A stretch of DNA of 64,000 nucleotides, from IMG/VR virus record IMGVR_UViG_3300031951_000001, positions 62,001 to 126,000 of that record; one strand, 5' to 3'. Below are positions 290 through 40,934 of the stretch, in pieces. Below the pieces are notes generated by a model. It did no database searches. It was given only the letters and a program-made list of their open reading frames with translations, and had not been told where the DNA came from. Each line of letters begins with the position of its first letter. Position 1 is the first letter of the stretch. Both the position numbers and the translations under genes were made by a program.

Positions 290-300
290 AAATAAAACCA

Positions 301-528
301 ATGGCACGCTATAGAGTATTAGAAATCACAGATAAGTTAATTTATAACGGAAGACCATATTGGGTTATTGAAAAAAAAATACTAGGTCTATGGTGGACTC
401 AGTATTTTGAAGAACATTCAGAGTGGGGAGCAACCTATTATGAAAAAGATAAGGCGATGACCTGGTATGAATATCACTGCGATAATGACTCAAGAATAAA
501 AACCAAAGTAATTGCTCAAAACAAATGA
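301..528 (+). CDS. hypothetical protein
   Basis: 75-aa ORF with A-rich upstream region; ATGA overlap with next gene. Confidence 0.6.
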   Translation: MARYRVLEITDKLIYNGRPYWVIEKKILGLWWTQYFEEHSEWGATYYEKDKAMTWYEYHCDNDSRIKTKVIAQNK

Positions 529-857
529 TGGAAGACCTCAAACATAGATGGGAACAAATTGACGAGGACGATTATGTTGCCAAATATCGTGATATGATGC
601 TCCGAGTTGAAAAGATGGAGGAGCAACAATGGTGGTGGGCGGTTTATAGAGGAAAAGAAGAACTATGTCCCGAGAAACCATTTGCGAGAAAGAAAGATTA
701 TGCGATGAAGATGGCAGAGGAATGTGCCGAGGAAAACATTGAACCATATGTTTCAGATGATTTTCAGATTGGACCGGATGGTGCGTTTGAATATACTGAC
801 GATGAAATATCAGAGTGGGACGGAACATTAATGGACGGACTTGAAGAAGAGGAATAA
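525..857 (+). CDS. hypothetical protein with acidic C-terminus
   Basis: 110-aa ORF coupled to the upstream gene. Confidence 0.6.
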   Translation: MMEDLKHRWEQIDEDDYVAKYRDMMLRVEKMEEQQWWWAVYRGKEELCPEKPFARKKDYAMKMAEECAEENIEPYVSDDFQIGPDGAFEYTDDEISEWDGTLMDGLEEEE

Positions 858-1998
858 GAATATTATTTGGTTAATAATTCTCACATTAAGTGGATTGGTG
901 TCGCTCGCCCAATGTCCTAACGCAAATTTTGAATTTGGTACCTTTACTAACTGGACTGGTAAGAGAGGAACTTGTTGTCCGATTAATCTACCATTTGTAG
1001 GTATATTGGCAGGTAGACAAACAATTGTAAGTGCCGGACTTGACCCCCATTCTTGTGGGGGACTAAACAGAGTATATCAAGGTAATTTTTCGGCAAGATT
1101 GGGTAATGACCAAAACAATTCAAGAGCCGAAGGGTTGTATTATACATTTACCGTAAGCCCCGCAACAACGTTAGTTCAGTATGCTTATGCTGTTGTTTTA
1201 CAAGACCCTGGACATAATGACGGAGCTCAACCAAGATTCCAATCAAGGGTTAGATTATCTAATGGTAGTATTATACCTTGCACAGAATATGTTGTAACTG
1301 CGGGACCTAACCTTCCTGGTTATAATTATTGTATGGAAAATGATATTTTTGGAAATCCAGTACAGGTTGCTTATAGTGATTGGAGGGTTATTTCAATTGA
1401 TTTATCTTCTTATGTTGGACAAAGTGTTACACTTGAATTTGAGACAGGTGATTGTGATTTAGGTGCTCACTATGGTTACGCATATATTGACGCAATATCT
1501 TGTGGACCAATTGAGACAGAAATTTATTATTGTCAAGCAAGTGACTCTATTTTGATTGAGGGACCTGAAGGTTTTGCAACATATGAGTGGGTTGAAACTG
1601 GTGACACAACAAGGGTTATAACAATTCCCCCATTAGTTTATGATACGTTAAATTTAAATGTTACAACTGTTACTGGATGTGAATTAACTCTCCAAATTAT
1701 TTTGGACCCAATTCCACTTCTTGCAAATATTATTTGTGAGGATGTTTGTTTTCCTGATTCTAATAATTTTATTAATCTTACTCCTACCATAGAAGGATAT
1801 AATGTAAAATTTTTATGGGATTTTGACGACGGAAATATATCTGATGATATATCACCAACTCACCAGTACTTGTCACCAGGTGTTTATAATGTAACAATGA
1901 CCGCAAATGTATTAAATACAAACTGCACGGATATTGTAAATTGCGAGGTTGAGGTCTTCGATATTCCTGTAATTCCTGGAATTATTAGTCACGATTAG
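841..1998 (+). CDS. secreted Bacteroidota-type surface protein with C-terminal PKD domain
   Basis: Signal peptide ending SLA-Q; N-domain motifs SARLGN and YAVVLQDPGH; PKD motif FLWDFDDG..PTHQYLSPGVYNVTMT; ends IPVIPGIISHD. Confidence 0.75.
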   Translation: MKKRNKNIIWLIILTLSGLVSLAQCPNANFEFGTFTNWTGKRGTCCPINLPFVGILAGRQTIVSAGLDPHSCGGLNRVYQGNFSARLGNDQNNSRAEGLYYTFTVSPATTLVQYAYAVVLQDPGHNDGAQPRFQSRVRLSNGSIIPCTEYVVTAGPNLPGYNYCMENDIFGNPVQVAYSDWRVISIDLSSYVGQSVTLEFETGDCDLGAHYGYAYIDAISCGPIETEIYYCQASDSILIEGPEGFATYEWVETGDTTRVITIPPLVYDTLNLNVTTVTGCELTLQIILDPIPLLANIICEDVCFPDSNNFINLTPTIEGYNVKFLWDFDDGNISDDISPTHQYLSPGVYNVTMTANVLNTNCTDIVNCEVEVFDIPVIPGIISHD

Positions 1999-2046
1999 TC
2001 TTTTTCAAGATATTTATAGTAGAATAAACTCTAACTATTCTTTACT

Positions 2047-2604
2047 ATGAAAAAACTTATTCTATTTTTTTTGGTTCTACTTCCAGTAACATTACTGGCT
2101 CAATTTACAACTATTAATCCTGATACGGTTTGTATTAACTCTCCGTTTGCAACTTATCAGGTTCCAAATACTCCAAACTATACTTACAATTGGACTGTTT
2201 CAGCACCTGGTGTTTTAACTGCAGGTCAAGGAACAAACGAGATTACCGTTGATTGGTCGGCAGCACCTGCTGGCGGTCCTATAGTAGATGCGATTAGTGT
2301 TTATGCAACAACGCCGGCAGGTTGTGACGGACCTCCGATTACAATGAATGTTTTTATTTTGGAAATATTACCAATTGTTCTACCACTTGATTTTTGTGAA
2401 GGTGACCCTTGTGAAGATTTGGTGGCAACACCAGCTGGTGGAGTATTCACAGGACCAAATATTGTTAACGGTCAGTATTGTCCGCAAACTGCGGGAACTG
2501 AAACGGTGACTTACACCATAACTGAGGCGGGATGCACATTTACTGCGACAGCTGATATGACCGTCTATCCAATTCCTGTCTTGGACAACATTTCTCATGA
2601 CTAA
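2047..2604 (+). CDS. secreted Ig/PKD-like repeat protein
   Basis: Signal peptide ending LLA-Q; YNWTV..GQGTNEITVDW; ATPAGGVFTGP; ends IPVLDNISHD. Confidence 0.7.
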   Translation: MKKLILFFLVLLPVTLLAQFTTINPDTVCINSPFATYQVPNTPNYTYNWTVSAPGVLTAGQGTNEITVDWSAAPAGGPIVDAISVYATTPAGCDGPPITMNVFILEILPIVLPLDFCEGDPCEDLVATPAGGVFTGPNIVNGQYCPQTAGTETVTYTITEAGCTFTATADMTVYPIPVLDNISHD

Positions 2605-2606
2605 TA

Positions 2607-3179
2607 ATGAAACAAATAAAAACACTTTTGTTGTTTTTGTTGGTCATGATTGTTTCAGGACAAGACCAAAAGATAGACATATGCGAAGACGAATCTAAAA
2701 CAGAATATACGTATTCGATAGAGTCTAATACACCAAATACAACATTTTATTGGTACGTAGATGGTATCTATCATTTTGGACAAACCCTGACCGTCAATTG
2801 GGAAACTTATTCTCCTGGAGTCCATACAATTAAAGTTTATGGAAAAAGTGATGGATGTAGGTCAAACCCGATGGAGTTTAAAGTTTTCATTGGGGAATGT
2901 TCTTCAATCTATATTCCAAATGCTTTTACTCCAAACGATGATGGGTTTAACGATACTTGGTTTCCCCAAGGAACAGGATGGGAAAGTATAGAAGTATTAG
3001 TATTTGACAGATGGGGGGTACTTGTATTTAAGTCAGTTGACCCAAAAGGACAATGGATTGGTAACTTTAGAGGTGGAGAATATTACGTTCAAAATGATGT
3101 CTACGAATATAAGGTTACTTGGAAGGGTATTGACCGAGAACCTGAAATAATTTTTGGTCATGTTACAGTTGTTAGGTAA
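2607..3179 (+). CDS. secreted protein with gliding-motility-associated (T9SS type B) C-terminal domain
   Basis: Signal peptide; IYIPNAFTPNDDGFND..VFDRWG..W.G..VY.Y..GHVTVVR signature. Confidence 0.85.
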   Translation: MKQIKTLLLFLLVMIVSGQDQKIDICEDESKTEYTYSIESNTPNTTFYWYVDGIYHFGQTLTVNWETYSPGVHTIKVYGKSDGCRSNPMEFKVFIGECSSIYIPNAFTPNDDGFNDTWFPQGTGWESIEVLVFDRWGVLVFKSVDPKGQWIGNFRGGEYYVQNDVYEYKVTWKGIDREPEIIFGHVTVVR

Positions 3180-3234
3180 AAACATTTGATTTTTCATATT
3201 TGATTTAGTATGTTTATGTCAAATTAATAATTAT

Positions 3235-3468
3235 ATGTCATTACAGAAACTAGTATTTAACACAACAGACAAAACCGCTCGAGTTTTTTCAGCATCAATT
3301 CCGGATGAAGTAGTATTTCATTACGAAAACATATCAACCGTAAAACCTTTGGACGGTTACTATGAAATAATGCAGAGAGTTGATAGCTCAACCGCACCAT
3401 CAGGGTATTCAGCAATTCCCGTATTACGAGTACCGATTGTTAATACAAACATGGTTATTGAGAAATGA
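3235..3468 (+). CDS. hypothetical protein
   Basis: 77-aa ORF coupled to the next gene. Confidence 0.6.
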   Translation: MSLQKLVFNTTDKTARVFSASIPDEVVFHYENISTVKPLDGYYEIMQRVDSSTAPSGYSAIPVLRVPIVNTNMVIEK

Positions 3469-3986
3469 AATATAAAATCATTGTGAGTGGACGTGGCGCA
3501 GAATGCTACGTCCATTCTATTGACGAAAATCAAAAGTCGAAATTGTTTGAGTGTGATGTCGAGAATGACAATTGCGAACACGAAGAAATTATTGAAATAT
3601 TAAATAAAAATGATATCTTCGAAACCGATAATATCTATCTCGGTCCTTACAATGACCCCGAAAATTTTATAATCGAAGTATTCAACGAAAATGAGGTTAA
3701 AGTATGGTCATCAGAAAATGACCATGAATTCAAAGAAGACGAGTACGAGTTTATAATCGGAAAAGAAAATTACCTTATTGTAGAAGATTACACAAAAGGA
3801 CAATTCTTCAATTATGAGATTGAACTTGATGAAGAATTCGATTCTGATAAATTAAAGCCGGTAATTACTGAAGTTATCGATGGGATTGAAATAATCACCA
3901 AAATTAGATATGGTGAAATTGATTTGGAAGTATTTAAAGAATATGGTGATTACTGGAGTAAAGGTATCACATATTATTTATCATGA
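3465..3986 (+). CDS. hypothetical acidic protein
   Basis: 173-aa ORF. Confidence 0.65.
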   Translation: MKYKIIVSGRGAECYVHSIDENQKSKLFECDVENDNCEHEEIIEILNKNDIFETDNIYLGPYNDPENFIIEVFNENEVKVWSSENDHEFKEDEYEFIIGKENYLIVEDYTKGQFFNYEIELDEEFDSDKLKPVITEVIDGIEIITKIRYGEIDLEVFKEYGDYWSKGITYYLS

Positions 3987-4049
3987 GAAAAATACCATTC
4001 TATTTTTATCACATAACAAATATTATTTTAACTAAAATATTTAATATTT

Positions 4050-4868
4050 TTACGCGACGTTAATCTCAAAGTTATCAACTTTGGCAACCGCGTTAGCTCT
4101 ATGTGAGCTAGTACCTCCTCCCGCATTTATATCGGCAAAATATTCCGCAGCCTCTTTTTTGTCTGTAAAGTTTGGGAAAGTTGATGCGGATTTACCTTTA
4201 GTAAAAAATGCGATTGCGATTTTTGCTGCGATTTCAGGGTCATTAACTAAATCTGGATTTTTAACTAACTCATCACCCATACCAATCATTCTACTATATT
4301 TTTCATAATTTTTAATACCGGTTAGTTGGTTGAACCCTCTACCTCTATACGTGAAACCATCGTCTCCACCTTGATTACCAACTGTTTTAGCGTAAACTAC
4401 ATTGAAAAATTTTCTCATATCACTTTTTAATGCGTTTAATTCACTATCACTATATCCGGCCACTCTTTTACCGAATATTTTTCTAATTCTACTATTGGCC
4501 GTGGTTGCGTATGAAACCTCACTTTTAGGTTTGAAATTACATTCCTTATTAATAACTGATAAAATACCTACTTGAGTATAGGGGTTTGTTATACCCGCCT
4601 CATTCATTTTATCTATTAAAAAATTTATATTTTTTTGTTGTTCAGAATCAAAATTACCAACAATTTTCACATCACCGTTTACAGGTGAACTTTTAGTGGT
4701 GCCTGTTTCCGATGGTTTTTCTTCTGATGAGCTTGGGGTTTTGGAGGGTTTCTCAAACATTTTCTTTATTGATAAAGCAAGTGCCTTTTCAATAAAAGAT
4801 TGCTCATTTATATTGTGTAGTTTTTTTATATGACTTTTTTCTTCTTCGGTAATTAATAATTTTCTCAT
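4050..4868 (-). CDS. glycoside hydrolase family 19 (chitinase/lysozyme-like) lytic enzyme
   Basis: DGFTYRGRGFNQLTGIKNY and NPDLV..P..AA motifs; N-terminal leader MRKLLITEEEKSHIKKLH. Confidence 0.8.
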   Translation of the reverse strand: MRKLLITEEEKSHIKKLHNINEQSFIEKALALSIKKMFEKPSKTPSSSEEKPSETGTTKSSPVNGDVKIVGNFDSEQQKNINFLIDKMNEAGITNPYTQVGILSVINKECNFKPKSEVSYATTANSRIRKIFGKRVAGYSDSELNALKSDMRKFFNVVYAKTVGNQGGDDGFTYRGRGFNQLTGIKNYEKYSRMIGMGDELVKNPDLVNDPEIAAKIAIAFFTKGKSASTFPNFTDKKEAAEYFADINAGGGTSSHRANAVAKVDNFEINVA

Positions 4869-4914
4869 TACAACCTTTTTATTATAAATATATTTATAGT
4901 GATAAAGTGATACA

Positions 4915-5304
4915 ATGAAAGTTACGGTAGTGCATCAGGATAAAGACAGAGCCTCAAGAAATAAAGAGGTGTGCGATAGATTTATAAAGTTTTTATTTTC
5001 ACAATATCCTCTAAAACATGACTTAAAGATATTTTTCCTTAAAAATCGTATAGGTGAAATGAGTACCGGCTCCAGAAGTGAAAATCACGTTATTAAAGTT
5101 CTGACCAAAAATAGAATCAATAGAGATATTCTTCGCACATTGGCACACGAGTGGGTACATGAATATCAGATGGATATTATGAAAAGGGAAAGAGGTCAAG
5201 ATATTGGTGGTAAGAATGAAAATGAAGCTAACGCTCTATCCGGCTCATTAATAAAAAAGTTCGAGAAAAAATTCCCGAACTTTGAAGATACGATGTATGA
5301 ATAG
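4915..5304 (+). CDS. HExxH zincin-like metalloprotein
   Basis: LRTLAHEWVHEYQ..ENEANA. Confidence 0.65.
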   Translation: MKVTVVHQDKDRASRNKEVCDRFIKFLFSQYPLKHDLKIFFLKNRIGEMSTGSRSENHVIKVLTKNRINRDILRTLAHEWVHEYQMDIMKRERGQDIGGKNENEANALSGSLIKKFEKKFPNFEDTMYE

Positions 5305-5308
5305 AATG

Positions 5309-5734
5309 TTAGTCGATACTAACAACTTCTAAATCAAAAATCAATTTTTTACCCGCCAAAGGATGATTAGCATCAATTTTAACGGTAGATTCATTAATTT
5401 CAACAATACGAACATTAATTGGTCCATTTGGACCCATTCCCTGCAGCATATCACCAACTGAAACATTTTCCGGAACCTGCTCTTTTGCAATTTCACTAAC
5501 CAACATTTCGTTTACATCACCATAAGCATCCTCACAAGGAATTTCAATGGTTCTTTTTTCGCCAATTGTCATACCAATCAAACCGCTTTCAAAACCTTTG
5601 ATTAGTTGTCCTTGACCTAATTTAGCTTTCAATGGCTCACGACCTTCAGTAAGTGAAGTATCGAAAACTGAACCATCTTCCAATCGACCGGTGTAGTTAA
5701 CCGATACTGAATCTGAATCTTGTATTGTTTTCAT
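5309..5734 (-). CDS. FKBP-type peptidyl-prolyl isomerase (SlyD/FkpB-like, no His-rich tail)
   Basis: VNYTGRLEDGSVFDTS, GQLIKGFE, DANHPLAGKKLIFDLEV. Confidence 0.92.
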   Translation of the reverse strand: MKTIQDSDSVSVNYTGRLEDGSVFDTSLTEGREPLKAKLGQGQLIKGFESGLIGMTIGEKRTIEIPCEDAYGDVNEMLVSEIAKEQVPENVSVGDMLQGMGPNGPINVRIVEINESTVKIDANHPLAGKKLIFDLEVVSID

Positions 5735-5891
5735 ATTGTATTTTTTTAAATAATAAGGTATTTTTTATATTAAACAAACTTTTTATTTGAAATTTTTTAA
5801 TAAAAAAAACTTGTGTGATGACTAAATCGTAGTATATTTGTAAAAATAACATATTTATAATATATAATAATTTTCTAATTCATTTGGGGGA

Positions 5892-6071
5892 ATGACAAGC
5901 GAAAAAATAATGGAAGAAATGTTTCATATTGCCTACAGACACGGTCTTATGAACGAATTACATGAAAGAGCAGGACAAATTCAAAAAGAATATAGTGCTC
6001 CTATTACAACCGCAGTACCACTTGCTTTTCAAGCTATGAGAAAAGAGGGGTTACTTCAGGATGAAGAGTAA
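5892..6071 (+). CDS. small hypothetical protein (59 aa, not in ORF track)
   Basis: MTSEKIMEEMFHIAYRHG..LLQDEE translated by hand; TATATTTG and TATTTAT motifs upstream. Confidence 0.5.
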   Translation: MTSEKIMEEMFHIAYRHGLMNELHERAGQIQKEYSAPITTAVPLAFQAMRKEGLLQDEE

Positions 6072-6346
6072 TTTTCGAGTAAATCATAGGATGATTGAAT
6101 AATCAGTCGTTCTCCGTCAAATCCGGTGTATTTCCAGCATTCTTCAATGACATAATCTAATGAAGTAATTTGAGATTCCTCAAATAATTTAATGTCTGAT
6201 AGATACAACTTACAATCAACCATATAAGATTTTTTGGTTGTACAGTATTTTACGGATAAGACATCAACAATACTGTCTTTACCAAACAATAGCTCAATAT
6301 CTTTGTAGTAAAGATAGTTTAAAAGTATAATGAGGCACCCTTTCAT
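6056..6346 (-). CDS. hypothetical protein
   Basis: 96-aa ORF. Confidence 0.55.
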   Translation of the reverse strand: MKGCLIILLNYLYYKDIELLFGKDSIVDVLSVKYCTTKKSYMVDCKLYLSDIKLFEESQITSLDYVIEECWKYTGFDGERLIIQSSYDLLENYSSS

Positions 6347-6395
6347 CTTTTTTTATAATTATAATAGTAAATAAACCTAACTTAAACAAAAAATA

Positions 6396-6638
6396 ATGAT
6401 AGAATCCACTATTACTCTATTAAAAAAACTTGACAAACGTAAAAAAATTGAAAAAGACTTCGAATGGGTGGTAAAAATCGTGTCATCTAGTGAAAATTTT
6501 AACCATATTGTGATTAGTAATAGGCTTTTTGAGGCTTTTACTCACAAATGGAGAAATCATATGACTGAAAACCAATTAAAGGAGTATAGTTTTACATTTG
6601 AACAAGAAAAAATGATAACAATAGGACATTTTTTGTAG
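6396..6638 (+). CDS. hypothetical protein
   Basis: 80-aa ORF with A-rich upstream region. Confidence 0.55.
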   Translation: MIESTITLLKKLDKRKKIEKDFEWVVKIVSSSENFNHIVISNRLFEAFTHKWRNHMTENQLKEYSFTFEQEKMITIGHFL

Positions 6639-6697
6639 AAAAAGTTGATTTTTAAGTGTTTTAGGACTATTTTTCTCAAAATTACAATATTTATCAA

Positions 6698-6765
6698 AAC
6701 TATCACTCTCATCAGAGAGCCTATATATAGAAAAAGGGACTTAATTTTTGTTAAGTCCCTTTTTT
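6698..6765 (+). ncRNA. candidate small RNA
   Basis: TATTTAT at 6688-6694, hairpin CTCTC-ATCA-GAGAG, then terminator GGGACTTAA/TTAAGTCCC plus T-run; no ATG in between. Confidence 0.35.
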
Positions 6766-6794
6766 CATTAAAAAACTTGCCTTATCTTTGTAAC

Positions 6795-7034
6795 ATGAAA
6801 GCAAAACTAACATTTGATTTAGATGACATCGATGATAAGATGGCTCACGAGCGTTGTGTTAAGTCAACCGACATGGCATTAGTTCTTTGGGAGATTATGA
6901 CCAATTCATACCGTGGTTTAACCAACGGATATGACGAAGATGACTCATATCACAAAGGAGTTGATGCGGTTTATGAAAAACTTCGTGAATTGATGGAAGA
7001 ACATGACATAAATCCACATAATTTAATACGATGA
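6795..7034 (+). CDS. hypothetical protein
   Basis: Start reassigned to the ATG 4 nt after TATCTTTG; begins MKAKLTFDL. Confidence 0.65.
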   Translation: MKAKLTFDLDDIDDKMAHERCVKSTDMALVLWEIMTNSYRGLTNGYDEDDSYHKGVDAVYEKLRELMEEHDINPHNLIR

Positions 7035-7079
7035 GAAAATTTTGGAATAAATTAGTTAAATTTTTTAAAACAGTATCAG

Positions 7080-7625
7080 ATGGTATCGATGAAACACAGT
7101 ATAAAAATGGTTGGGGAAAGCTTTAAAGACATAAAATACGCTGTTAAGCGATTTATTCGAAAAATTAAGAACGTTTTTCGATGGCTTCCCACAATTTGGA
7201 AGGATGAGGACTATGATAGTCACTTCATTAATGAAATATTAATCAAAAAACTCGAACATACCCGAGATTTCTTCTTGTCTGATAATACTCACATCCTTAA
7301 TGCTAAAGAGGTTGCTGCCGAAATTCAGGAGGCAATTGACCGTCTTCACATGACCCGTGATAGTTGGGAGTTTTATGAAGACCCGGCCATGGAGGAGATT
7401 CAGAAGAAGTGGGGGAAGAGTACATTCAATTGGATTCCGACAAATGATGGTACCGGCTCAATGTTTATGGAGATTGAACATGAGAATGTAAAAACTCCCG
7501 AGGATGAGGAACAATACTCAACCGAGTTTAGAGCCACAATGAAACAAGCTCGTAAGGATTATAGAAAAGATAAAAAAGAAGCGTATAAATTCATCGCGAA
7601 GAATATTGATAAATGGTGGGATTAA
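7080..7625 (+). CDS. hypothetical protein
   Basis: 181-aa ORF ending WWD; start uncertain. Confidence 0.65.
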   Translation: MVSMKHSIKMVGESFKDIKYAVKRFIRKIKNVFRWLPTIWKDEDYDSHFINEILIKKLEHTRDFFLSDNTHILNAKEVAAEIQEAIDRLHMTRDSWEFYEDPAMEEIQKKWGKSTFNWIPTNDGTGSMFMEIEHENVKTPEDEEQYSTEFRATMKQARKDYRKDKKEAYKFIAKNIDKWWD

Positions 7626-7636
7626 AAATTAATAAT

Positions 7637-8158
7637 ATGGAATGGTATATTGTAAGAGCACAAGCTAATCGGGAACGTAAAGTTTCAGAACGACTTCTTA
7701 AAGAAGGTGAAAAAGGGGAATTATCTGGAGTATTGGGTAGAGTTGTTGTACCGTTGGAGAAGGTATTTGCCACAAAAAACGGGAAAAAGACACAACGAGA
7801 AAAAGTATTGTTTCCTGGTTATGTATTTGTTGAGACCTCGGCAATTGGGGAACTCAAACAGGTTGTTAAAAAGATTGATGGAGCCACAGGACTATTGTCT
7901 GACAGAGCCGGTAACATCCAAGTTATTCCCGAAAATGAAGTTAGTCGTATGATTGGACTTCACGAAGAGAATAAGGCGAAAGAATTCACCGATATTTTCA
8001 GTATTGGTGATGAAGTTACGGTCGCTGAAGGCCCATTCGCATCATTCAAGGGGAATATTGAACATATTGACAAAGAAAGAGGTAAAATTAAGGTAAATGT
8101 CCTTATTTTTGGTAGACCAACATCAGTTGAACTCGAAGACACACAAATAAGAAAATGA
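7637..8158 (+). CDS. nusG: transcription termination/antitermination factor NusG
   Basis: WYIVRAQANRERKV, FPGYVFVE, KOW motif GDEVTVAEGPFASFKG, IFGRPTSVEL. Confidence 0.93.
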   Translation: MEWYIVRAQANRERKVSERLLKEGEKGELSGVLGRVVVPLEKVFATKNGKKTQREKVLFPGYVFVETSAIGELKQVVKKIDGATGLLSDRAGNIQVIPENEVSRMIGLHEENKAKEFTDIFSIGDEVTVAEGPFASFKGNIEHIDKERGKIKVNVLIFGRPTSVELEDTQIRK

Positions 8159-28268: not shown

Positions 28269-28378
28269 CTATCCAAATATACAAAATTTATGTCGGATAA
28301 AAAATAACTTGTAAAAAAATAATTTATTTGGTTATTTGAAATATGTTCGTATATTTGTACTCAGGAACAACAACATTT

Positions 28379-28450
28379 GCCCCTGTAAGTAAAGGGATAT
28401 ACTATTTCACTTCTAATGAAATTTTTCTGGTTCGAATCCAGACGGGGGTA
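28379..28450 (+). tRNA. tRNA-Arg(TCT)
   Basis: Acceptor GCCCCTG/CGGGGGT; anticodon arm TTTCA-CTTCTAA-TGAAA; T-arm TCTGG-TTCGAAT-CCAGA. Confidence 0.85.
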
Positions 28451-28495
28451 CTAATTTTTTTTGACTATTGGTTCGAGTTGTGATATTTATTAAAT

Positions 28496-32253: not shown

Positions 32254-32337
32254 GCTGGGATGGTGTAACGGTAGCCACGAGGGACTTAAAATCCCTTGGA
32301 CATTGTGTCTGTGCGGGTTCGAGTCCCGCTCCCAGTA
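32254..32337 (+). tRNA. tRNA-Leu(TAA)
   Basis: Anticodon arm AGGGA-CTTAAAA-TCCCT; long variable arm; T-arm GCGGG-TTCGAGT-CCCGC. Confidence 0.92.
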
Positions 32338-32343
32338 CTTTTA

Positions 32344-32417
32344 GTGCCTTTAGCTCAATCGGTTAGAGCAACTGACTCATAATCAGTAGGTCGTAGGTTC
32401 GATTCCTACAAGGCGCA
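32344..32417 (+). tRNA. tRNA(CAT), probably Ile2 (lysidine type) rather than Met
   Basis: ACTGA-CTCATAA-TCAGT; acceptor GTGCCTT/AAGGCGC with C4-G69 and C5-G68. Confidence 0.85.
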
Positions 32418-32448
32418 CGATATTTATATAAACTAAAAACTAAATTTG

Positions 32449-33969: not shown

Positions 33970-34105
33970 ACTGTATGTGGTTTTCTGTTTAAGCTTTTAT
34001 GGTTTCATTATAATATCTGAAATCATAAGTAGAAAACTACCTAACACAGGTTATAGTAAATGGTGGAGAAAGTATTTTATGGATGAGTGTGAGAAGTGTG
34101 ACTAA
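33950..34105 (+). CDS. small membrane protein (51 aa)
   Basis: MLNTLIKLYVVFCLSFYGFIII..KWWRKYF; followed by a terminator hairpin. Confidence 0.45.
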   Translation: MLNTLIKLYVVFCLSFYGFIIISEIISRKLPNTGYSKWWRKYFMDECEKCD

Positions 34106-34157
34106 ATGTCACACTTTTTTTTTATTTCATAATATTTATAGATATATTTTTTGCTTA

Positions 34158-34493
34158 ATGGAACAACAAATTTATACTGTGGTAATCACATTGTTAACTG
34201 TTTTAACTTCTACCGCTGCGTGGAGGTATTATGAAAAAAGGATGGTGTTAAAGGCTAAACAAGAACAGGATGTACATAAAGATAGCGAAATGTATCGAGA
34301 TGACCTGAGAGAAAGAGTTGTTAAGTTGGAGACATTGTTAAATGAGTCGGCTAAAGAAAAAGATAAAATGAGAGAAAACATTGTATTATTGACTGCTCAA
34401 GTATCCAAATTAGAAGTGGAAGTTGAATTTTTAAGAAGGGATAACGAAAATCTTCGAGCCGAAAATCATTCATTAAGACAAAGATTGGTATAA
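34158..34493 (+). CDS. N-terminal TM plus coiled-coil protein (possibly lysis-related)
   Basis: Start reassigned to MEQQIYTVVITLLTVL; coiled coil; directly precedes the M23 gene. Confidence 0.65.
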   Translation: MEQQIYTVVITLLTVLTSTAAWRYYEKRMVLKAKQEQDVHKDSEMYRDDLRERVVKLETLLNESAKEKDKMRENIVLLTAQVSKLEVEVEFLRRDNENLRAENHSLRQRLV

Positions 34494-35215
34494 TGACAAA
34501 TTTTTCTTACATAACAAATACCTCTAAAGGTAGAATAACATCCCCTTTCGGTAATAGGGTACATCCTACATTAGGTAAGGTTAAAAAACATTCTGGATTA
34601 GATATTGCTCATCCAACAGGAACTGAAGTACTAGCAATGACCGATGGTGTTGTTATTCAAAGTGAAATGGCGAATAATGCTTGTGGTGGCACAATTGCTA
34701 TAGACCACGGAATGGTTGATGGAAAAAAACTTAAAACCAGATTTTGTCATAATAGTAAATTACTTAAAAAAGTAGGAGATAATGTTAAAAAGGGTGAGGT
34801 AATTGCAATTTCTGGAGGGGGTAAAAGTGATGTTGGTAGAGGTCGCTCAACAGGACCTCATATCCATTTTGAAGTGTATGAAAACGGTCAAACTGTAAAT
34901 CCAAAACCGTATTATGAGGGTTCATCAGTGGGATTAAAATCTGATAGTGAAACTACAACCGATTCAGATACCACAACTGAACCAACCAAACCAATTACCT
35001 CACAATCGAGTGATGAAGATATTGAAAATTTTATAAAATATTTGATTGGTGGTAAGGACATGACAATCGCTCAAAAAAACAAAGCTTTGATGCCACTTGT
35101 TAAACAATTATCACCAGGATTGGCGGATATTTTAAGTTCAGCAATACAAAATGAATCAACGGAATATGTTACAAAATTGACCGAAGATATAAAAAGAATA
35201 AAAAATTTACTTTAA
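34493..35215 (+). CDS. M23 family peptidase
   Basis: ITSPFG.R.HP, HSGLD, STGPHIHFEV, VNP; ends LTEDIKRIKNLL. Confidence 0.9.
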   Translation: MTNFSYITNTSKGRITSPFGNRVHPTLGKVKKHSGLDIAHPTGTEVLAMTDGVVIQSEMANNACGGTIAIDHGMVDGKKLKTRFCHNSKLLKKVGDNVKKGEVIAISGGGKSDVGRGRSTGPHIHFEVYENGQTVNPKPYYEGSSVGLKSDSETTTDSDTTTEPTKPITSQSSDEDIENFIKYLIGGKDMTIAQKNKALMPLVKQLSPGLADILSSAIQNESTEYVTKLTEDIKRIKNLL

Positions 35216-35216
35216 T

Positions 35217-35786
35217 ATGGACTATTTTTCACCAGTAAACGGAGTAGAAGCCGAAGAAAAAACGTTTTCAAAAACAGTAGAATTTAATCCAAGGTCCGAA
35301 AGTACTATACTATCTCCTGTAGACGGAACAGTAATAGACAAAAGAGGTGAAAGTATTAAAATAGAAGGTGATGATGGACATATACTAACTTTTGATAAAG
35401 TTGGTAGAGCGTCGGTCACAAATGGAAGCAGAGTTTTTAAAAAAAGAACTGTAGTAGGATATACCAAATCAGACGATGCTCTTGAGCTTACAATTTTTAA
35501 TGACAAAAATTCTAAAGTGGATGTAAAAAAATATCTAAAAGGTGAAATCGCACCAATTACTACAGGAAATGATAAGACAGGTTCATCGACTGGTAGTAAA
35601 TTATATAAAAGTACAAATGTTACTGATGGTAAAAAAATAAGTGACTACGCTTTAGTACGAGGAGTTGTAAAAGACGTGGCACTGGCCCCATTTACCGCAT
35701 TCCAAGCTCTAACAAAAGAAAGTGTTGAGGAGTCGGAAAAAATCTTAAAGGAACAAGTCGAGAGAATCAAACAATTGATGAAATAA
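35217..35786 (+). CDS. degenerate M23-like protein
   Basis: ILSPVDGTV scaffold without zinc His ligands; ends LKEQVERIKQLMK. Confidence 0.55.
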   Translation: MDYFSPVNGVEAEEKTFSKTVEFNPRSESTILSPVDGTVIDKRGESIKIEGDDGHILTFDKVGRASVTNGSRVFKKRTVVGYTKSDDALELTIFNDKNSKVDVKKYLKGEIAPITTGNDKTGSSTGSKLYKSTNVTDGKKISDYALVRGVVKDVALAPFTAFQALTKESVEESEKILKEQVERIKQLMK

Positions 35787-35800
35787 AAAAAATTTCAGAT

Positions 35801-36074
35801 TTTGCTTGTTCCAGCAATATTTATTCTTACATTTGTAGAGGATTTGACACCTACAGGTGATGAAAGATACTCGGAAGTTAAATCTAAAAAAACTTACAAA
35901 TAAATTTGGTAGAATGAAAAAGTCACCATATATTTGTAAAAGATTTGAGACGGACAACGATTAAGATACAAGTCTCGAATCTTTAAAAAAAAGTTTAAGA
36001 AAAATTTGACAGAACGAAAAATTTGACTTAAATTTGTAAAACAATTCGGAAATGACCGAAGAAGTTCTTTGAAA
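35801..36074 (+). promoter_or_regulatory. three tandem Bacteroidota-type promoters plus boxB/boxA-like site
   Basis: TAnnTTTG at 35828, 35929 and 36029, the last two with TTTG 20 nt upstream; hairpin TTCGG-AAATGA-CCGAA then AGTTCTTTGAAA. Confidence 0.7.
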
Positions 36075-36079
36075 ATTAG

Positions 36080-36925
36080 ATTATCCATCAGGATGTTGAT
36101 GATGAGACCTTAGGGTTGATTCTGAGACAACTGTAAAAGATAATGGGCCGTGTATGGTCCTTAAATAAACTACGAAAGTAGGATAAAGTGACCTCCCCCG
36201 TGTTGAGGAGGTTGCGGTTTCGAAAGGAACTCGAGTACACAAGTGGGATATCACAAGACCTTTAGTACCGAGGGTAACACTGTAGGGAAAGTGGTCAGGT
36301 GACTTGGCAAAGTGGATTGTCAAGTTGAGGTGGGAACACCAACAAGAATAACCCATAGGAATCAAGTAAGAAATGTGGCTTCCAACTACAATATTGCGGA
36401 TTCCAATACAGAAGGGTACTTAAAACCGAAAGGTAAGGTAGAGAACGAGTGGTGTCGCTACTACCCCTAAGGAAGACCTACCAAGGTCTCTTTATGAAGT
36501 AATCTGAAAGTATGGAGATAGGGATATCTCACGGAGTAGTTTAGTATTCTGTCGCTCAAAAGGAGACGGAACTTACGGTGGACCACTACTCTGACACATC
36601 CACGACACAATCTTAAATTATTAAAAAATAATTAAAGGAAAAGTGTCCATCAGGTTTAAGTGAAAGGTCACTACCTAATCACTGGCTGTCAGTGGTACAG
36701 AAAGACCCCAAGTCCGACTGTAGTTTTACGAAAAACCTTTAATCCCGCAAGGATGAACTGGGGTGGCAACCTCGGAAAGAGTTAAGTAATAAGAGAGTAA
36801 CTTAAACCTCAAGGAGTGGTAAACCTAAAAGACCGTGACTGAGAAATACTTCTCAAAAGGAAGTGGATACGAAGGGAAACAATAATCCTTCAAAAGGTTC
36901 TCACAGAAAGCTGTAATCTCAGGCT
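36080..36925 (+). ncRNA. giant structured RNA, probably GOLLD
   Basis: About 845 nt, GC-richer than its flanks, many GNRA-capped hairpins, no credible ORF, directly upstream of a tRNA in a phage; family call from size and context only. Confidence 0.65.
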
Positions 36926-36941
36926 TCGTTTAATCTTACAT

Positions 36942-37014
36942 CGCAACTTAGAGCAGAGGCCAGCTCGTCAGGCTCATAACCTGAAGGTCGGAGGTTCGAA
37001 TCCTTCAGTTGCAA
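36942..37014 (+). tRNA. initiator-type tRNA-fMet(CAT)
   Basis: C1-A72 mismatch; anticodon arm TCAGG-CTCATAA-CCTGA; T-arm GGAGG-TTCGAAT-CCTTC. Confidence 0.85.
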
Positions 37015-37099
37015 CAAATTTACAGGTGAGCTTGTCTCACCTTTTTTTATTCTTATATTTCTTATACCATTCAGGTATAAACAATAATTCTTTTATTTT

Positions 37100-37399
37100 A
37101 TGGAAATGTTTTATTTCACTTTAGGTGTTCTTACGGTTATTGCTCTGACATTAGTTGGGGTGGTAGTTTTGGGAATGGGTAGAGTTCAAAAGCTCCAAAG
37201 AGAAATGCAGAGTTACAGAGAACAGTACAGATGGGATTTTGAAAATAACCATCGTCGTTTTGATGAACAACAGAGAATAACTCAAGAAAGATTCTCGGAT
37301 TTCTACAGAGATTTTGAAAAACTTCACCAAGAATGTACAAGTTACACGGACAAAAGAATTGATAAATTTATTTATCAATACAAAGAGAAAGAAAGTTAA
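37100..37399 (+). CDS. N-terminal TM plus coiled-coil protein
   Basis: 99 aa; hydrophobic residues 4-26. Confidence 0.65.
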   Translation: MEMFYFTLGVLTVIALTLVGVVVLGMGRVQKLQREMQSYREQYRWDFENNHRRFDEQQRITQERFSDFYRDFEKLHQECTSYTDKRIDKFIYQYKEKES

Positions 37400-37430
37400 A
37401 AAGAAAACCCCTCCGAGTGAGGGGTTTTTT
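37397..37430 (+). repeat. 34-bp direct repeat, copy 1 (stop codon plus bidirectional terminator)
   Basis: TAAAAAGAAAACCCCTCCGAGTGAGGGGTTTTTT, identical to 38517-38550. Confidence 0.9.
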
Positions 37431-37505
37431 ATTATTAAAATATTACAAAAAAGTAATACACATTTGAGGTTTTCACCTTATTTATAGATATAATCCCACC
37501 CAATT

Positions 37506-38519: not shown

Positions 38520-38550
38520 AAAGAAAACCCCTCCGAGTGAGGGGTTTTTT
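38517..38550 (+). repeat. 34-bp direct repeat, copy 2 (terminator between the GT and tmRNA)
   Basis: Identical to 37397-37430. Confidence 0.9.
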
Positions 38551-38557
38551 CTTACGG

Positions 38558-38932
38558 TGGAGGTACGGGGAGTCGAACCCCTTCCTACTCATCTTAACTA
38601 CTAAGCCCTACATGTTTAGGTCAACATCGCTTCTCAATGTTCCGAAATATTGGTTTTTGAGCTCTCAAAACCACAAACGAGTTGTGTTTCTTTTCGGGTA
38701 GAAACCACACCACAGTACGAGCTTCTGTTCCAAGGTTGTATGCTTACCGACCCGTTTTGTATCCCAATCCTAGATTAGGCTACTGAAATGTTCTCTTCAG
38801 TACGGATAAGACCAACTGCAGAGAGTTTGTTGATAACGTTGCCGTTTATCGTGTGAACCAGTTTTACAAGGTTAGTTCAGCCTCGACATGCTCCGAGTAA
38901 TTAACTATGCTAGTCAATTCCAAGTTACCCCC
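38558..38932 (-). ncRNA. ssrA: tmRNA
   Basis: 5' GGGGGTAACTTGGAATTGAC; 3' GGTTCGACTCCCCGTACCTCCA with G3-U70; tag frame 38843-38775 after ATAAAC. Confidence 0.93.
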
Positions 38933-40109: not shown

Positions 40110-40934
40110 ATGACAAGAGACCTAAATTTACTTAAATCAGTTTTATCTGTGCCAACCAAAACTTATCAAGAGGAATTGATGATTGAGTTTTTGATTGATT
40201 GGTTAGAACGAAACAACATTGAATATTCGGTAGACGAACATTGGAATGTTTATGCGACCAAAGGTGAAGTTGATGAGCATTCTTACTATCCTTGCGTTGT
40301 TGCTCACACAGATACCGTACATAACATTGATGTAATCAATATACGTGAGGAGGAATTAAAGAACGCACAAGGTCAGATTCGACCATCTTTGAAGGCGTAT
40401 AATGACTTTGGAAAACCAACTGGTATTGGTGGTGATAATAAGTGTGGAGTTTTTGCTTGTTTGGAATTGTTAAAAGAACTTCCCGTATTAAAGGCGGCAT
40501 TTTTTGTATCAGAAGAAACAGGTTGTCACGGCTCAAGAAAGGCGGACCCAAATTTCTTTGAAAACGTAGGATACGCAATTCAATTCGATGCTCCATTCAA
40601 TTGGATGGTCACTGAATACAGCATGGGAGTTAAATTGTTTGATAAGTCAGACGATTTCTTCAAGAAATGTGATGAAGTCCTGAATGAATCATTTGAAGGA
40701 CGACAAAAATATGGGTCACACCCATACACCGATGTATATGCCTTGAGAAGCAAGTTTGATTTTTCTTGTATCAATATCTCAATCGGATATTATGATTATC
40801 ACACACCTGAAGAATATGTTGTAATCGAAGATGTATTCAGTGGAATTGATGCTGGTAAAAAAATGATTGAAAAATTGGGTAACAAAAAACACAAGGCCTC
40901 AATTGTAAAAGAAAAACAATTTTTGCTTTTTTAG
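40110..40934 (+). CDS. M20/M28-clan zinc peptidase-like protein
   Basis: VAHTDTVH, GGDNKCG, SEETGC, QFD, GYYDYHT.EE. Confidence 0.8.
   Translation: MTRDLNLLKSVLSVPTKTYQEELMIEFLIDWLERNNIEYSVDEHWNVYATKGEVDEHSYYPCVVAHTDTVHNIDVINIREEELKNAQGQIRPSLKAYNDFGKPTGIGGDNKCGVFACLELLKELPVLKAAFFVSEETGCHGSRKADPNFFENVGYAIQFDAPFNWMVTEYSMGVKLFDKSDDFFKKCDEVLNESFEGRQKYGSHPYTDVYALRSKFDFSCINISIGYYDYHTPEEYVVIEDVFSGIDAGKKMIEKLGNKKHKASIVKEKQFLLF

What the first reader, a model, noticed from the sequence alone, without database searches (positions are those of the whole stretch)
36080..36925. About 845-nt ornate non-coding RNA co-transcribed with the initiator tRNA
Seen: a long non-coding, hairpin-dense block (CTAC-GAAA-GTAG, ACC-GAAA-GGT, TCC-CGCAA-GGA and others) with an AT-rich internal linker near 36610-36640 suggesting two domains; it ends about 16 nt before tRNA-fMet. 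Known: GOLLD RNAs are about 800 nt, phage- and tRNA-associated and of unknown function. If it is not GOLLD it would be a new giant RNA class.
Basis: partly seen in the sequence, partly recalled or inferred. Interest (0 to 1): 0.7.

Follow-up and report, generated by a model that had tools for sequence, protein, structure and literature searches.

The report
GOLLD nanocage RNA gene, jumbo phage
The flagged block is a genuine, highly expressed member of the known GOLLD family of giant phage RNAs (which assemble into RNA-only cages), so it is not a new class; the one fresh point is that it is driven by a leader copied from the host's ribosomal-RNA operons.

Summary
Rfam GOLLD (RF02032) matches window 36532-36925 end to end (317 bits; cut-off 150). 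The 5' half (36141-36531), which the model does not cover, is homologous to the 5' domain of env-38, the GOLLD solved by cryo-EM as a 14-mer cage. With 52 non-redundant phage relatives, 186 in-domain pairs are about 97-98% paired and 140 show compensatory changes. Four metatranscriptomes cover only about 36102/36134-36922; DNA metagenomes cover the flanks too. The window lies in a 322-kb lake jumbo phage.

Boundaries need correcting. The structured core is 785 nt (36141-36925). The inferred primary transcript starts near 36041 and ends at the terminator 37024-37050, after an initiator-like tRNA-Met; co-transcription is inferred, not shown.

New here: the gene has a Bacteroidota-type promoter (TTTG-N20-TAAATTTG), a covarying hairpin and AGTTCTTTGAAA, the boxA (NusB/S10 site) found in 20 of 25 sampled Bacteroidota 16S leaders. 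This leader occurs in 57/60 and 35/36 relatives and upstream of the phage tmRNA. It switches to the proteobacterial boxA form in a clade with sigma-70 promoters. Biological function remains unknown.

The parts
35905..35936 (+). Upstream promoter-like module (TTTG-N20-TATATTTG). It is a diverged tandem copy of the main promoter module, about 100 bp upstream, followed by its own hairpin. Possibly a second promoter.
   Evidence: Pattern hit. The similarity to the 36005-36036 module was read from the sequence. It is present only in close relatives. One DNA-run contig skips 98 bp here (35886->35985), as expected if the repeat number varies between strains.
36005..36036 (+). Main promoter: -33 TTTG and -7 TAAATTTG (Bacteroidota sigma-A type). 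It can also be read as TTGACA-17-TAAATT. It is preceded by an A-tract. The inferred transcription start is near 36041.
   Evidence: The TAnnTTTG element is conserved at this aligned position in relatives. It lies upstream of boxA in 49 of 57 unique upstream regions, most often 25-27 nt away.
36045..36060 (+). Leader hairpin TTCGG-AAATGA-CCGAA, in the position of the small 5' hairpin of rrn leaders.
   Evidence: One search lists the inverted repeat. In relatives it changes to TCAGG/CCTGA with both sides compensating, so it acts as RNA.
36063..36074 (+). boxA-like element AGTTCTTTGAAA, the putative NusB:S10 loading site.
   Evidence: 57 of 60 unique upstream regions; shuffles 17 of 1200; 35 of 36 in a second set. 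The same motif is in 20 of 25 Bacteroidota 16S leaders. An exact 14-mer lies 114-166 nt upstream of 16S in 5 of 120 genome hits. The B. subtilis boxA AUGAUCUUUGAAA binds NusB (PMC13753749).
36076..36140 (+). Precursor segment: conserved flanks (GATTATCC.TCAGG ... CTG.TAAA.GATAAT) around a hairpin whose length varies between relatives. Only its 3' part (from about 36102) is seen in RNA contigs.
   Evidence: Conservation profile and alignment. RNA depth is zero or nearly so over 36048-36111, with one X16 contig starting at 36102, although DNA runs cover this segment.
36141..36531 (+). GOLLD 5' domain, env-38 type; it forms the cap of the cage in the solved structure.
   Evidence: nhmmer finds it in about 100 relatives, E down to 1e-145. 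100 pairs, 97.3% paired, 73 with compensatory changes. Its start aligns with base 1 of the env-38 cryo-EM construct.
36532..36925 (+). GOLLD 3' domain, the universally conserved half covered by Rfam RF02032.
   Evidence: 317.4 bits, model 1-416, E = 4.6e-90. 86 pairs, 97.9% paired, 67 with compensatory changes. Conservation drops sharply after 36925.
36592..36650 (+). A/U-rich variable linker inside the 3' domain. It is the counterpart of the disordered linker (nt 497-538) that points into the env-38 cage. No tRNA is embedded in it here.
   Evidence: Unpaired, gapped stretch in the Rfam alignment. Variable length in alignment A1. Paper description.
36942..37015 (+). tRNA-Met(CAT), initiator-like (C1xA72, A11:U24; no encoded CCA).
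   Evidence: ARAGORN and Rfam; features read. The same layout occurs in 15 of 81 unique relatives, and 10 of those tRNAs are initiator-like.
37024..37050 (+). Intrinsic terminator (7-bp stem, then TTTTTTTAT) that closes the GOLLD-tRNA unit.

Best explanation
This is the GOLLD RNA gene of an uncultivated 322-kb freshwater jumbo phage.

Shown:
- It belongs to the GOLLD family in both domains.
- Its structure is maintained by selection.
- It accumulates as an abundant discrete RNA of about 790 nt (about 36134 to about 36922) in natural communities, while neighbouring genes and its own leader do not.

Inferred from sequence architecture:
- Host RNA polymerase starts near 36041 at a Bacteroidota-type promoter.
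- The nascent leader (hairpin, then boxA AGUUCUUUGAAA) loads host NusB:S10 and builds an rRNA-style antitermination complex.
- That complex carries the polymerase through roughly 900 nt of untranslated, highly structured RNA without Rho-dependent termination, and may assist co-transcriptional folding.
- Transcription continues through the initiator-like tRNA-Met to the terminator at 37024-37050.
- RNase P and other host nucleases then release the tRNA and trim off the leader.

Inferred by homology to env-38:
- The mature RNA folds into a 5' cap domain and a 3' ring domain joined by a floppy A/U linker.
- It self-assembles into a closed homo-oligomeric cage, most likely a 14-mer, with the linker inside.

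What the cage does is unknown. My committed guess (about 0.3) comes from its company: an initiator tRNA, other tRNAs, a phage tmRNA, an adjacent lysis-like module, and the published ribosome pull-down. On that basis I think it acts on the translation apparatus late in infection, by sequestering or storing a translation component, rather than on DNA.
For: Family membership: Rfam 317 bits over the full model. The 5' domain aligns to the env-38 construct from its first base.

Structure: 188 consensus pairs, 140 with compensatory changes. Slid-partner controls fall to 34-47% paired.

Expression: four metatranscriptomes from four studies give word depths of about 30 to 7,800 over the core. Depth is zero on the upstream flank in all four, and downstream only X20 shows a trace (3.5). 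100%-identical contigs are present. Adapter junctions sit at 36134 and 36922. DNA run X2 covers flanks, leader and tRNA evenly at about 25-27x.

Phage origin: virus record, CheckV 100% complete.

Host-type promoter. A neighbouring peptidase is closest to those of Cellulophaga (Flavobacteriaceae) phages among isolated phages.

boxA:
- present in 57/60 and 35/36 relatives;
- present upstream of the phage tmRNA in the same layout;
- present in 20/25 Bacteroidota 16S leaders, often right after a hairpin, against 9/500 shuffles;
- switches to AGTTCTTTAACA in GOLLD loci with TTGACT-N17-TAGAGT promoters;
- the hairpin-then-boxA layout and NusB binding are documented for B. subtilis rrn.

One transcription unit with the tRNA.

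Cage. The loops CGCAA (36746-36750) and GGCA (36765-36768) each contain a self-complementary GC. The first becomes GUCGAA (CG) in three divergent relatives, the same GC/CG switch the paper uses as evidence for an intermolecular kissing loop.
Against: - No read-level 5'/3' end mapping was possible. The ends rest on assembled contigs and a few adapter junctions, and contig breaks also occur at branch points in DNA runs.
- No RNA contig bridges GOLLD to the tRNA or covers the leader, so both the upstream start and co-transcription are inferred.
- NusB:S10 binding was not tested; the complex job was not folded.
- The boxA motif count in the whole phage genome (3) does not exceed a reversed-pattern control (4). 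Only the positions of the hits are telling.
- The one Lactobacillales GOLLD examined has no boxA within 900 nt, and two GOLLD loci inside tRNA arrays have none within 840 nt, so the leader is not universal.
- The host assignment is indirect, and 0 of 151 sampled Bacteroidota genomes carry a GOLLD.
- Oligomeric state varies within the family (12-mer for S. agalactiae, 14-mer for env-38). This RNA is 48 nt shorter than env-38.
Confidence: 0.85

Rival explanations
1. The conserved AGTTCTTTGAAA and hairpin are not a working Nus-factor site. They could be passive baggage of a strong host rrn promoter that the phage captured, a promoter-proximal or discriminator element acting at the DNA level, or a nuclease (processing) signal that defines the mature 5' end.
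For: The leader is absent from steady-state RNA, which suits a processing signal as well as a transient loading site. The genome-wide motif count is not above control. Some GOLLD loci lack it. Binding is untested. Baniulyte et al. note that rRNA may be intrinsically Rho-resistant and that the role of Nus factors depends on context.
Against: - The motif stays nearly invariant where the promoter is replaced by an upstream tRNA (L100), so it is not just part of a promoter.
- It changes to the proteobacterial boxA form together with the promoter type.
- In L282 and L331 it appears a second time between the tRNA and GOLLD, as boxA does ahead of 23S in rrn operons.
- The hairpin covaries as RNA.
Confidence: 0.35
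2. GOLLD and the tRNA-Met are separate transcripts: GOLLD terminates or is made independently, and the tRNA has its own start.
For: RNA contigs end at about 36922 and give essentially no depth on 36944-37007. 63 of 81 unique relatives have no tRNA within 40 nt downstream.
Against: The spacer is only 16 nt, with no promoter-like or terminator-like site in it. The sole terminator follows the tRNA. In relatives without a tRNA, a terminator-like hairpin often sits where the tRNA is here. Mature tRNAs are routinely lost from standard RNA-seq libraries, so their absence says little (general knowledge).
Confidence: 0.2
3. It is a different or new class of giant RNA (ROOL, a group I/II intron, or something unnamed).
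For: None found. The Rfam model covers only the 3' half, so the 5' half could in principle have been something else.
Against: A permissive Rfam scan (E up to 1) of 35780-37100 returns only GOLLD and the tRNA. The 5' half aligns with the env-38 GOLLD 5' domain and with about 100 GOLLD loci.
Confidence: 0.01
4. The region encodes small proteins (for example the 94-codon minus-strand ORF 36081-36365) and the hairpins are incidental.
For: ORFs of 41-94 codons exist.
Against: There is no codon periodicity of substitutions. The ORF is open in only 11 of 52 relatives. Substitutions follow base pairing instead.
Confidence: 0.01

Closest known systems
GOLLD RNA env-38 (Rfam RF02032; cryo-EM 14-mer nanocage, PDB 9MEE; Kretsch et al., Nature 2025, PMC12286853)
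   Same: - Both domains are homologous. The 3' domain matches the family model end to end.
- The 5' domain aligns from the first base of the solved construct.
- An A/U-rich internal linker sits at the same place.
- The paired P21a/P21b-like hairpins carry GC-containing loops.
- Aquatic metagenomic phage context next to a tRNA-Met.
   Different: - 785 nt against 833 nt.
- The tRNA-Met lies downstream here, but upstream of env-38.
- The oligomeric state here is not tested.
- The promoter, hairpin and boxA leader described here lie outside the published construct, and the motif was not found in the paper's held supplementary files.
GOLLD of Lactobacillales (original L. brevis prophage example; S. 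agalactiae 12-mer, PDB 9L0R)
   Same: Same family through the 3' domain: a Lactobacillales genome copy scores 275 bits, and this clade's 3'-domain profile hits it at 1.3e-11. It is also tRNA-associated.
   Different: This clade's 5'-domain profile finds nothing there, and there is no boxA-like leader within 900 nt. The published Sag GOLLD lacks P9, P11a-c and P21b and forms a dodecamer.
rRNA operon leaders (rrn promoter, small hairpin/boxB, boxA; NusB/NusE/NusA/NusG/SuhB antitermination complex)
   Same: Same order of elements and nearly the same boxA sequence as in Bacteroidota 16S leaders and B. subtilis rrn. In both cases the product is a long, untranslated, highly structured RNA that is processed out of a precursor together with tRNA.
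   Different: The product is a phage RNA cage, not rRNA. Nus-factor binding and antitermination were not tested here.
ROOL RNA (phage and prophage RNA, 8-mer nanocage)
   Same: A large phage-borne RNA near tRNA islands that forms an RNA-only cage.
   Different: Unrelated sequence and fold. No Rfam ROOL match in the window, even at E up to 1 over the locus.

Membership tests
GOLLD RNA (Rfam RF02032) | 3' domain matches the family covariance model above the curated gathering score | tested here: met
   317.4 bits against 150, model positions 1-416 of 416, window 36532-36925
GOLLD RNA (Rfam RF02032) | Two-domain architecture of about 800 nt: a less conserved 5' domain, a conserved 3' domain and a variable unstructured linker | tested here: met
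   5' domain 36141-36531, 3' domain 36532-36925, linker about 36592-36650; matches the description
GOLLD RNA (Rfam RF02032) | 5' domain homologous to that of a solved or curated GOLLD (env-38 type) | tested here: met
   The printed start of the env-38 construct was aligned by eye to window 36141 onward. A full-length computed alignment was not made, because the construct sequence has no reference id.
GOLLD RNA (Rfam RF02032) | Secondary structure supported by covariation | tested here: met
   140 of 188 pairs have compensatory changes; 97-98% paired against 34-47% with slid partners
GOLLD RNA (Rfam RF02032) | Phage or prophage location near tRNA genes | tested here: met
   322-kb virus record; tRNA-Met 16 nt downstream and three more tRNAs within 9 kb
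GOLLD RNA (Rfam RF02032) | Accumulates as a discrete stable RNA | tested here: met
   Metatranscriptome contigs lie only over about 36102/36134-36922, whereas a DNA run covers the whole stretch evenly
GOLLD RNA (Rfam RF02032) | Self-assembly into a closed homo-oligomeric nanocage (12- or 14-mer) | not testable with these tools
   Inferred from homology only. GC-containing loops that could form symmetric kissing contacts are present.
rrn-type antitermination leader (boxA / Nus factors) | Sequence matches the boxA consensus of the relevant bacteria | tested here: met
   AGTTCTTTGAAA is identical to the boxA-like element in 3 of 25 sampled Bacteroidota 16S leaders and within 2 mismatches of 20 of 25. 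10 of 11 positions match the B. subtilis core GAUCUUUGAAA.
rrn-type antitermination leader (boxA / Nus factors) | Position in the transcribed leader just downstream of the promoter, preceded by a small hairpin | tested here: met
   Promoter 36005-36036, hairpin 36045-36060, boxA 36063-36074. Same layout in the rrn leader L250 and in B. subtilis. The transcription start itself is inferred.
rrn-type antitermination leader (boxA / Nus factors) | Binding of NusB:S10 to the RNA | not testable with these tools
Bacteroidota NusB references are not held.
rrn-type antitermination leader (boxA / Nus factors) | Confers resistance to Rho-dependent termination, or aids folding | not testable with these tools
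   Needs genetics or in vitro transcription
Bacterial initiator tRNA (tRNA-fMet) | CAU anticodon, C1xA72 mismatch, A11:U24 pair | tested here: met
   Read from 36942-37015: 5' CGCAACU / 3' AGUUGCA gives C1xA72; D-stem GAGC/GCUC gives A11:U24
Bacterial initiator tRNA (tRNA-fMet) | Three consecutive G-C pairs at the bottom of the anticodon stem (29-31:39-41) | tested here: inconclusive
   Only G30-C40 and G31-C39 are G-C; position 29-41 is A-U
ROOL / group I / group II introns | Match to the Rfam covariance model | tested here: not met
   No hit at gathering score in the window, nor at E up to 1 in 35780-37100

The most novel reading that the evidence does not exclude
GOLLD genes, and the tmRNA of this phage, are built as mimics of host rRNA operons. 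Each has a host-phylum-specific promoter, a small hairpin and a host-phylum-specific boxA. Through these the phage would recruit the NusB/NusE/NusA/NusG antitermination and RNA-folding machinery to transcribe the cage RNA, protect it from Rho and fold it co-transcriptionally. The leader would then be cut away, as it is for rRNA. That would be the first known host factor dependency for GOLLD biogenesis, and it gives a handle (boxA or nusB mutants) for switching the RNA off and finally asking what the cage is for.
Probability: 0.5. Interest if true: 0.55.

Novelty: new member of a known kind. Interest (0 to 1): 0.35.

Why it matters
GOLLD is one of the largest bacterial or phage non-coding RNAs. 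It is now known to form a cage wider than a ribosome, but it still has no known function.

This locus does not change the classification, but it adds practical leads:
- a complete jumbo-phage context with a probable Bacteroidota host;
- direct evidence of very high natural expression with defined ends that coincide with the construct solved by cryo-EM;
- an rRNA-operon-like leader that is conserved across about 90 non-identical related upstream regions and changes form with the apparent host phylum.

If the leader works as boxA does in rrn operons, GOLLD production depends on host Nus factors. That can be tested with ordinary genetics and could give the field a way to perturb GOLLD in vivo.

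Tried and rejected
- blastn of the locus against 50,697 deposited phage genomes found only the tRNA and a 138-nt, 71% match in an uncultured 634-kb phage. There is no close deposited relative.
- The single-sequence fold of the leader/P1 region (36041-36165) was not better than shuffles (z = -1.15), so I did not use it. The pairing of the conserved flanks around the variable hairpin stays unresolved.
- Complex prediction of boxA RNA with NusB and S10: Bacteroidota references are not held, and the B. subtilis job was accepted but not folded. This is no evidence either way.
- A literature search for the motif string and for GOLLD plus boxA found nothing relevant.
- A search of the cryo-EM paper's supplement for the 3' end of the env-38 construct found no match, so 3'-end equivalence rests on the Rfam model.
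- The genome-wide boxA count is not enriched: 3 hits against 4 for the reversed pattern. The third hit, at genome position 133030, lies in ordinary sequence with no RNA family and was dismissed as chance.
- The TTTG-N18-21-TAnnTTTG count in the window is only mildly above chance: 7 against 3.6 expected, with 8 of 100 shuffles reaching 7.
- No GOLLD was found in 151 sampled Bacteroidota genomes, so no prophage copy confirms the host.
- Two of my scripts used a mis-typed or mis-placed anchor and returned nothing, and an earlier strict-anchor attempt matched only 6 loci. One search corrected this.
- Ruled out: protein-coding region, ROOL, group I/II intron, new RNA class.
Full report
**1. What is there**

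The sequence at 36080-36925 is as described. ARAGORN and Rfam place a tRNA-Met(CAT) at 36942-37015. A terminator-like hairpin with a T-run follows at 37024-37050.

A scan of the whole window against Rfam 15 at gathering thresholds gives a full-length match to GOLLD (RF02032) at 36532-36925. It covers model positions 1-416 of 416, at 317.4 bits against a cut-off of 150, E = 4.6e-90. A permissive scan (E up to 1) of 35780-37100 returns only GOLLD and the tRNA. There is no ROOL and no group I or II intron.

The window is bases 62001-126000 of a 322,372-bp IMG/VR virus record that CheckV rates 100% complete. This is a jumbo phage, and it has a single GOLLD.

**2. The 5' half**

The Rfam model covers only the conserved 3' domain, so the 5' half needed its own test.

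- A 26-nt degenerate pattern from the conserved 3' core found at least 119 IMG/VR phage loci.
- nhmmer with window 36060-36531 hits about 100 of them, with E-values down to 1e-145.
- Supplementary Table 4 of the cryo-EM paper gives the env-38 construct. Its start (ATGGCCGCTATGGTCGTCAAATAAATACGAAAGTAGGATAAAGTGG...) aligns with window 36141 onward (ATGGGCCGTGTATGGTCCTTAAATAAACTACGAAAGTAGGATAAAGTGA...). The similarity continues through the printed part.

So the 5' domain is the env-38 type, and the structured core is 36141-36925 (785 nt; env-38 is 833 nt).

By contrast, a GOLLD found in a Lactobacillales genome shares only the 3' domain with this clade. That agrees with the literature statement that the 5' region is less conserved.

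**3. Structure and non-coding nature**

I aligned the window with 52 relatives that are less than 96% identical to each other (alignment A1).

- RNAalifold predicts 188 pairs, and 140 of them have at least one compensatory double change.
- In the 5' domain, 100 pairs are 97.3% paired and 73 show compensatory change. In the 3' domain, 86 pairs are 97.9% paired and 67 show compensatory change. Sliding the 3' partners by 1-3 columns drops these to 34-47% paired and 17-31 pairs.
- Substitutions show no codon periodicity (0.226/0.231/0.209). The longest ORF in the block (94 codons, minus strand) is open in only 11 of 52 relatives.

**4. Expression**

An index search found the sequence in lake and freshwater DNA metagenomes and in six metatranscriptome runs.

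I laid Logan contigs from four RNA runs, from four different studies, on 35600-37500.

- Summed word depths per run range from about 30 to 7,800 over roughly 36112-36925.
- Depth is zero on the upstream flank 35600-36047 in all four runs. Downstream of 37008 only X20 shows a trace (3.5 over 37082-37327).
- Depth is essentially zero on the tRNA.
- Contigs 100% identical to the window are present.
- In run X17, Illumina adapter sequence directly abuts 36134 on the 5' side and 36922 on the 3' side.
- In run X16, a perfect-match contig starts at 36102.

As a control, DNA run X2 covers the whole stretch, including leader, flanks and tRNA, at an even 25-27x with perfect contigs.

The RNA is therefore a discrete, abundant species. 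Its ends fall within a few bases of the boundaries of the solved env-38 construct. These are contig-level data, not read-level end maps.

**5. The leader: the part that goes beyond the known description**

Conservation does not begin at the core. The profile shows a conserved block at about 36003-36082, a variable-length segment, and then the core. It falls sharply after 36925.

The alignment shows the following elements in order:
- an A-tract;
- TTTG-N20-TAAATTTG at 36005-36036. TAnnTTTG with an upstream TTTG is, to my knowledge, the Bacteroidota sigma-A promoter consensus. The site also reads as TTGACA-17-TAAATT;
- a hairpin at 36045-36060 that covaries (TTCGG/CCGAA to TCAGG/CCTGA);
- the nearly invariant CGTTCTTTGAAA (AGTTCTTTGAAA in the window, 36063-36074).

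The evidence on this motif is as follows.

- It is present, with at most 2 mismatches, in 57 of 60 unique upstream regions of relatives, against 17 of 1200 shuffles. The other three carry a one-base deletion variant. 49 of the 57 have TAnnTTTG upstream, most often 25-27 nt away.
- In a second, independently retrieved set, 35 of the 36 loci with the same 5' domain have it.
- It persists where the promoter is replaced by an upstream tRNA (L100).
- In this phage genome it occurs at only three places with at most 1 mismatch. These are the GOLLD leader, directly upstream of the phage tmRNA in the same promoter-then-motif layout, and one apparently random site.

The motif is a boxA.

- A 2026 mBio paper shows that B. 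subtilis rrn operons start with a small hairpin immediately followed by AUGAUCUUUGAAA, which NusB binds. The E. coli consensus is UGCUCUUUAACA (PMC13753749).
- The exact 14-mer ACGTTCTTTGAAAA was sampled in 120 places of bacterial genomes. Five of them lie 114-166 nt upstream of a 16S 5' end on the same strand. Three are titled as Bacteroidota, one as Bacillota, and one title was not displayed. By my estimate chance would give about 0.07.
- Among 25 16S loci with enough leader, drawn from an even sample of Bacteroidota genomes, 20 carry the motif within 2 mismatches, against 9 of 500 shuffles. Three carry the window's exact 12-mer. The motif usually sits right after a hairpin. One leader (L250) reads TATATTTG-hairpin-AGTTCTTTGAAA, the same layout as here.
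- Two GOLLD loci with a different 5' domain (L282, L331) have sigma-70-type promoters (TTGACT-N17-TAGAGT). In L282 the boxA just before its 5' domain is AGTTCTTTAACA, the proteobacterial form; in L331 that copy is AGTTCTTTTACA, and the copy after its promoter is AGTTTTTTAACA. In both loci a boxA occurs once after the promoter and again between a tRNA-Met and GOLLD, as in an rrn operon.

No paper in the searchable library links GOLLD with boxA, and the motif is not found in the cryo-EM paper's held supplementary files.

**6. Host**

- The promoter type and the boxA form point to Bacteroidota.
- The neighbouring peptidase (40110-40934) has its best matches among isolated phages in Cellulophaga (Flavobacteriaceae) phages, at 32-33% identity and E about 1e-27.
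- No GOLLD was found in 151 sampled Bacteroidota genomes. That would fit carriage by lytic or jumbo phages rather than prophages, but it gives no positive confirmation.

I put this assignment at about 0.7.

**7. Relation to the tRNA**

The tRNA has C1xA72 and A11:U24, which are initiator signatures. It has only two of the three G-C pairs in the anticodon stem, and no encoded CCA.

Among 81 unique downstream regions of relatives:
- 18 have a tRNA within 40 nt. 15 are tRNA-Met(CAT), and 10 of those are initiator-like;
- 38 have a terminator-like hairpin within about 110 nt of the GOLLD end;
- 25 have neither by my simple scan.

Here the spacer is 16 nt with no promoter or terminator in it, and the terminator comes after the tRNA. 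One unit (promoter, leader, GOLLD, tRNA-fMet, terminator) is the economical reading, at about 0.7. No RNA contig bridges the junction.

**8. How it most likely works**

Shown: GOLLD membership, selected structure, abundant discrete RNA, phage origin.

Inferred:
- Transcription by host polymerase starts at about 36041.
- Nus-factor loading at boxA makes the polymerase processive and Rho-resistant over roughly 900 nt of untranslated RNA, and may chaperone folding.
- Processing removes the leader and the tRNA.
- The product assembles into an env-38-like cage, with the A/U linker (about 36592-36650) inside.

The paired hairpins at 36742-36754 (loop CGCAA) and 36758-36775 (loop GGCA) resemble P21a and P21b. 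The first loop switches its GC to CG in three divergent relatives. This mirrors the covariation that the cryo-EM paper takes as evidence for a symmetric intermolecular kissing loop. The assignment of these loops is my inference.

Published work gives no function. Ideas in print include encapsulation of tRNAs or ribosomes and 'inhibited storage' of embedded tRNAs.

The neighbourhood here suggests a late, translation-related role, which I hold at about 0.3. It includes:
- an M23 peptidase (Pfam 5e-25), plus a 'hol-like' PHROG hit and a weak Rz-like spanin hit;
- four tRNAs;
- a tmRNA.

**9. Verdict**

The finding is real and correctly named. It is a new member of a known family in its textbook setting, so the locus itself is of modest interest. 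The boundaries should be revised. The rrn-like leader is a testable addition that may be new to the field.

Noticed in passing
window 38555-38932 (-), leader to 39000: Phage-encoded tmRNA: Rfam RF00023, 94.6 bits against a cut-off of 47, full length, but not called by ARAGORN. It has the same promoter-plus-boxA leader as GOLLD (TTGGAT-N17-TATATTTG, then CGTTATTTGAAA 3 nt before the mature 5' end). A candidate tag reading frame ends ...EENISVA* rather than the usual ...ALAA.
   Followed up: partly
window 37404-37428 and 38524-38548: Two identical 25-nt GC-rich hairpins (AAAACCCCTCACTCGGAGGGGTTTT on the minus strand). Each sits just after a plus-strand ORF, and the second also sits just after the minus-strand tmRNA. 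They look like reused bidirectional terminators.
   Followed up: no
window 35787-36040: The 250-nt intergenic region upstream of GOLLD holds at least two tandem, diverged copies of the promoter-plus-hairpin module (35905-35936 and 36005-36036). This is reminiscent of rrn P1/P2 tandem promoters. One DNA-run contig skips 98 bp (35886->35985), which suggests that strains differ in copy number.
   Followed up: partly
window 36084-36092 and 36648-36656: The 9-mer TCCATCAGG occurs just upstream of the 5' domain, in the precursor segment, and again just after the linker at the start of the 3'-domain core helices. Both copies are conserved in relatives as TCC(A/G)T(T)CAGG. The leader copy might compete for, or guide, pairing during folding. 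Unexplained.
   Followed up: no
window 28327-28357 / 28379-28451; 32254-32418: More tRNA genes: Arg-TCT, Leu-TAA and a second Met-CAT of elongator or Ile2 type. The tRNA-Arg is preceded by a TTTG-N19-TATATTTG promoter-like site about 20 nt upstream.
   Followed up: no
window 34083-35786 and 37100-37399: GOLLD sits inside a lysis-like module. Upstream are a 'hol-like' PHROG hit, an M23 metallopeptidase/endolysin (Pfam 5e-25) and a second weak M23-like ORF. Downstream is a weak Rz-like spanin hit (E = 4e-4). This is interesting because GOLLD is reported to rise during lysis.
   Followed up: partly
L282 and L331 (IMG/VR 3300049893_002244, 3300002220_004223): A divergent GOLLD clade with a different 5' domain, organised like a miniature rrn operon: sigma-70 promoter, boxA, tRNA-Met, second boxA (AGTTCTTTAACA in L282), then GOLLD. 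L286 and L317 instead have GOLLD embedded in a tRNA array (Ser and Leu upstream; Glu and Leu downstream) with no boxA within 840 nt.
   Followed up: partly
L277, L280, L300, L307, L319, L335; L064, L045: Several IMG/VR contigs of 308-322 kb from other samples carry GOLLD genes of the same type and are likely sister jumbo phages. L064 (a 165-kb contig) is 100% identical over GOLLD and keeps the same tRNA layout.
   Followed up: no
L149, L219, L233, L239 (Bacteroidota genome contigs): The exact boxA 14-mer also recurs just after a small gene that ends ...RANRHKKKK* plus a hairpin. This may be a non-rRNA Nus-factor target in Bacteroidota.
   Followed up: no
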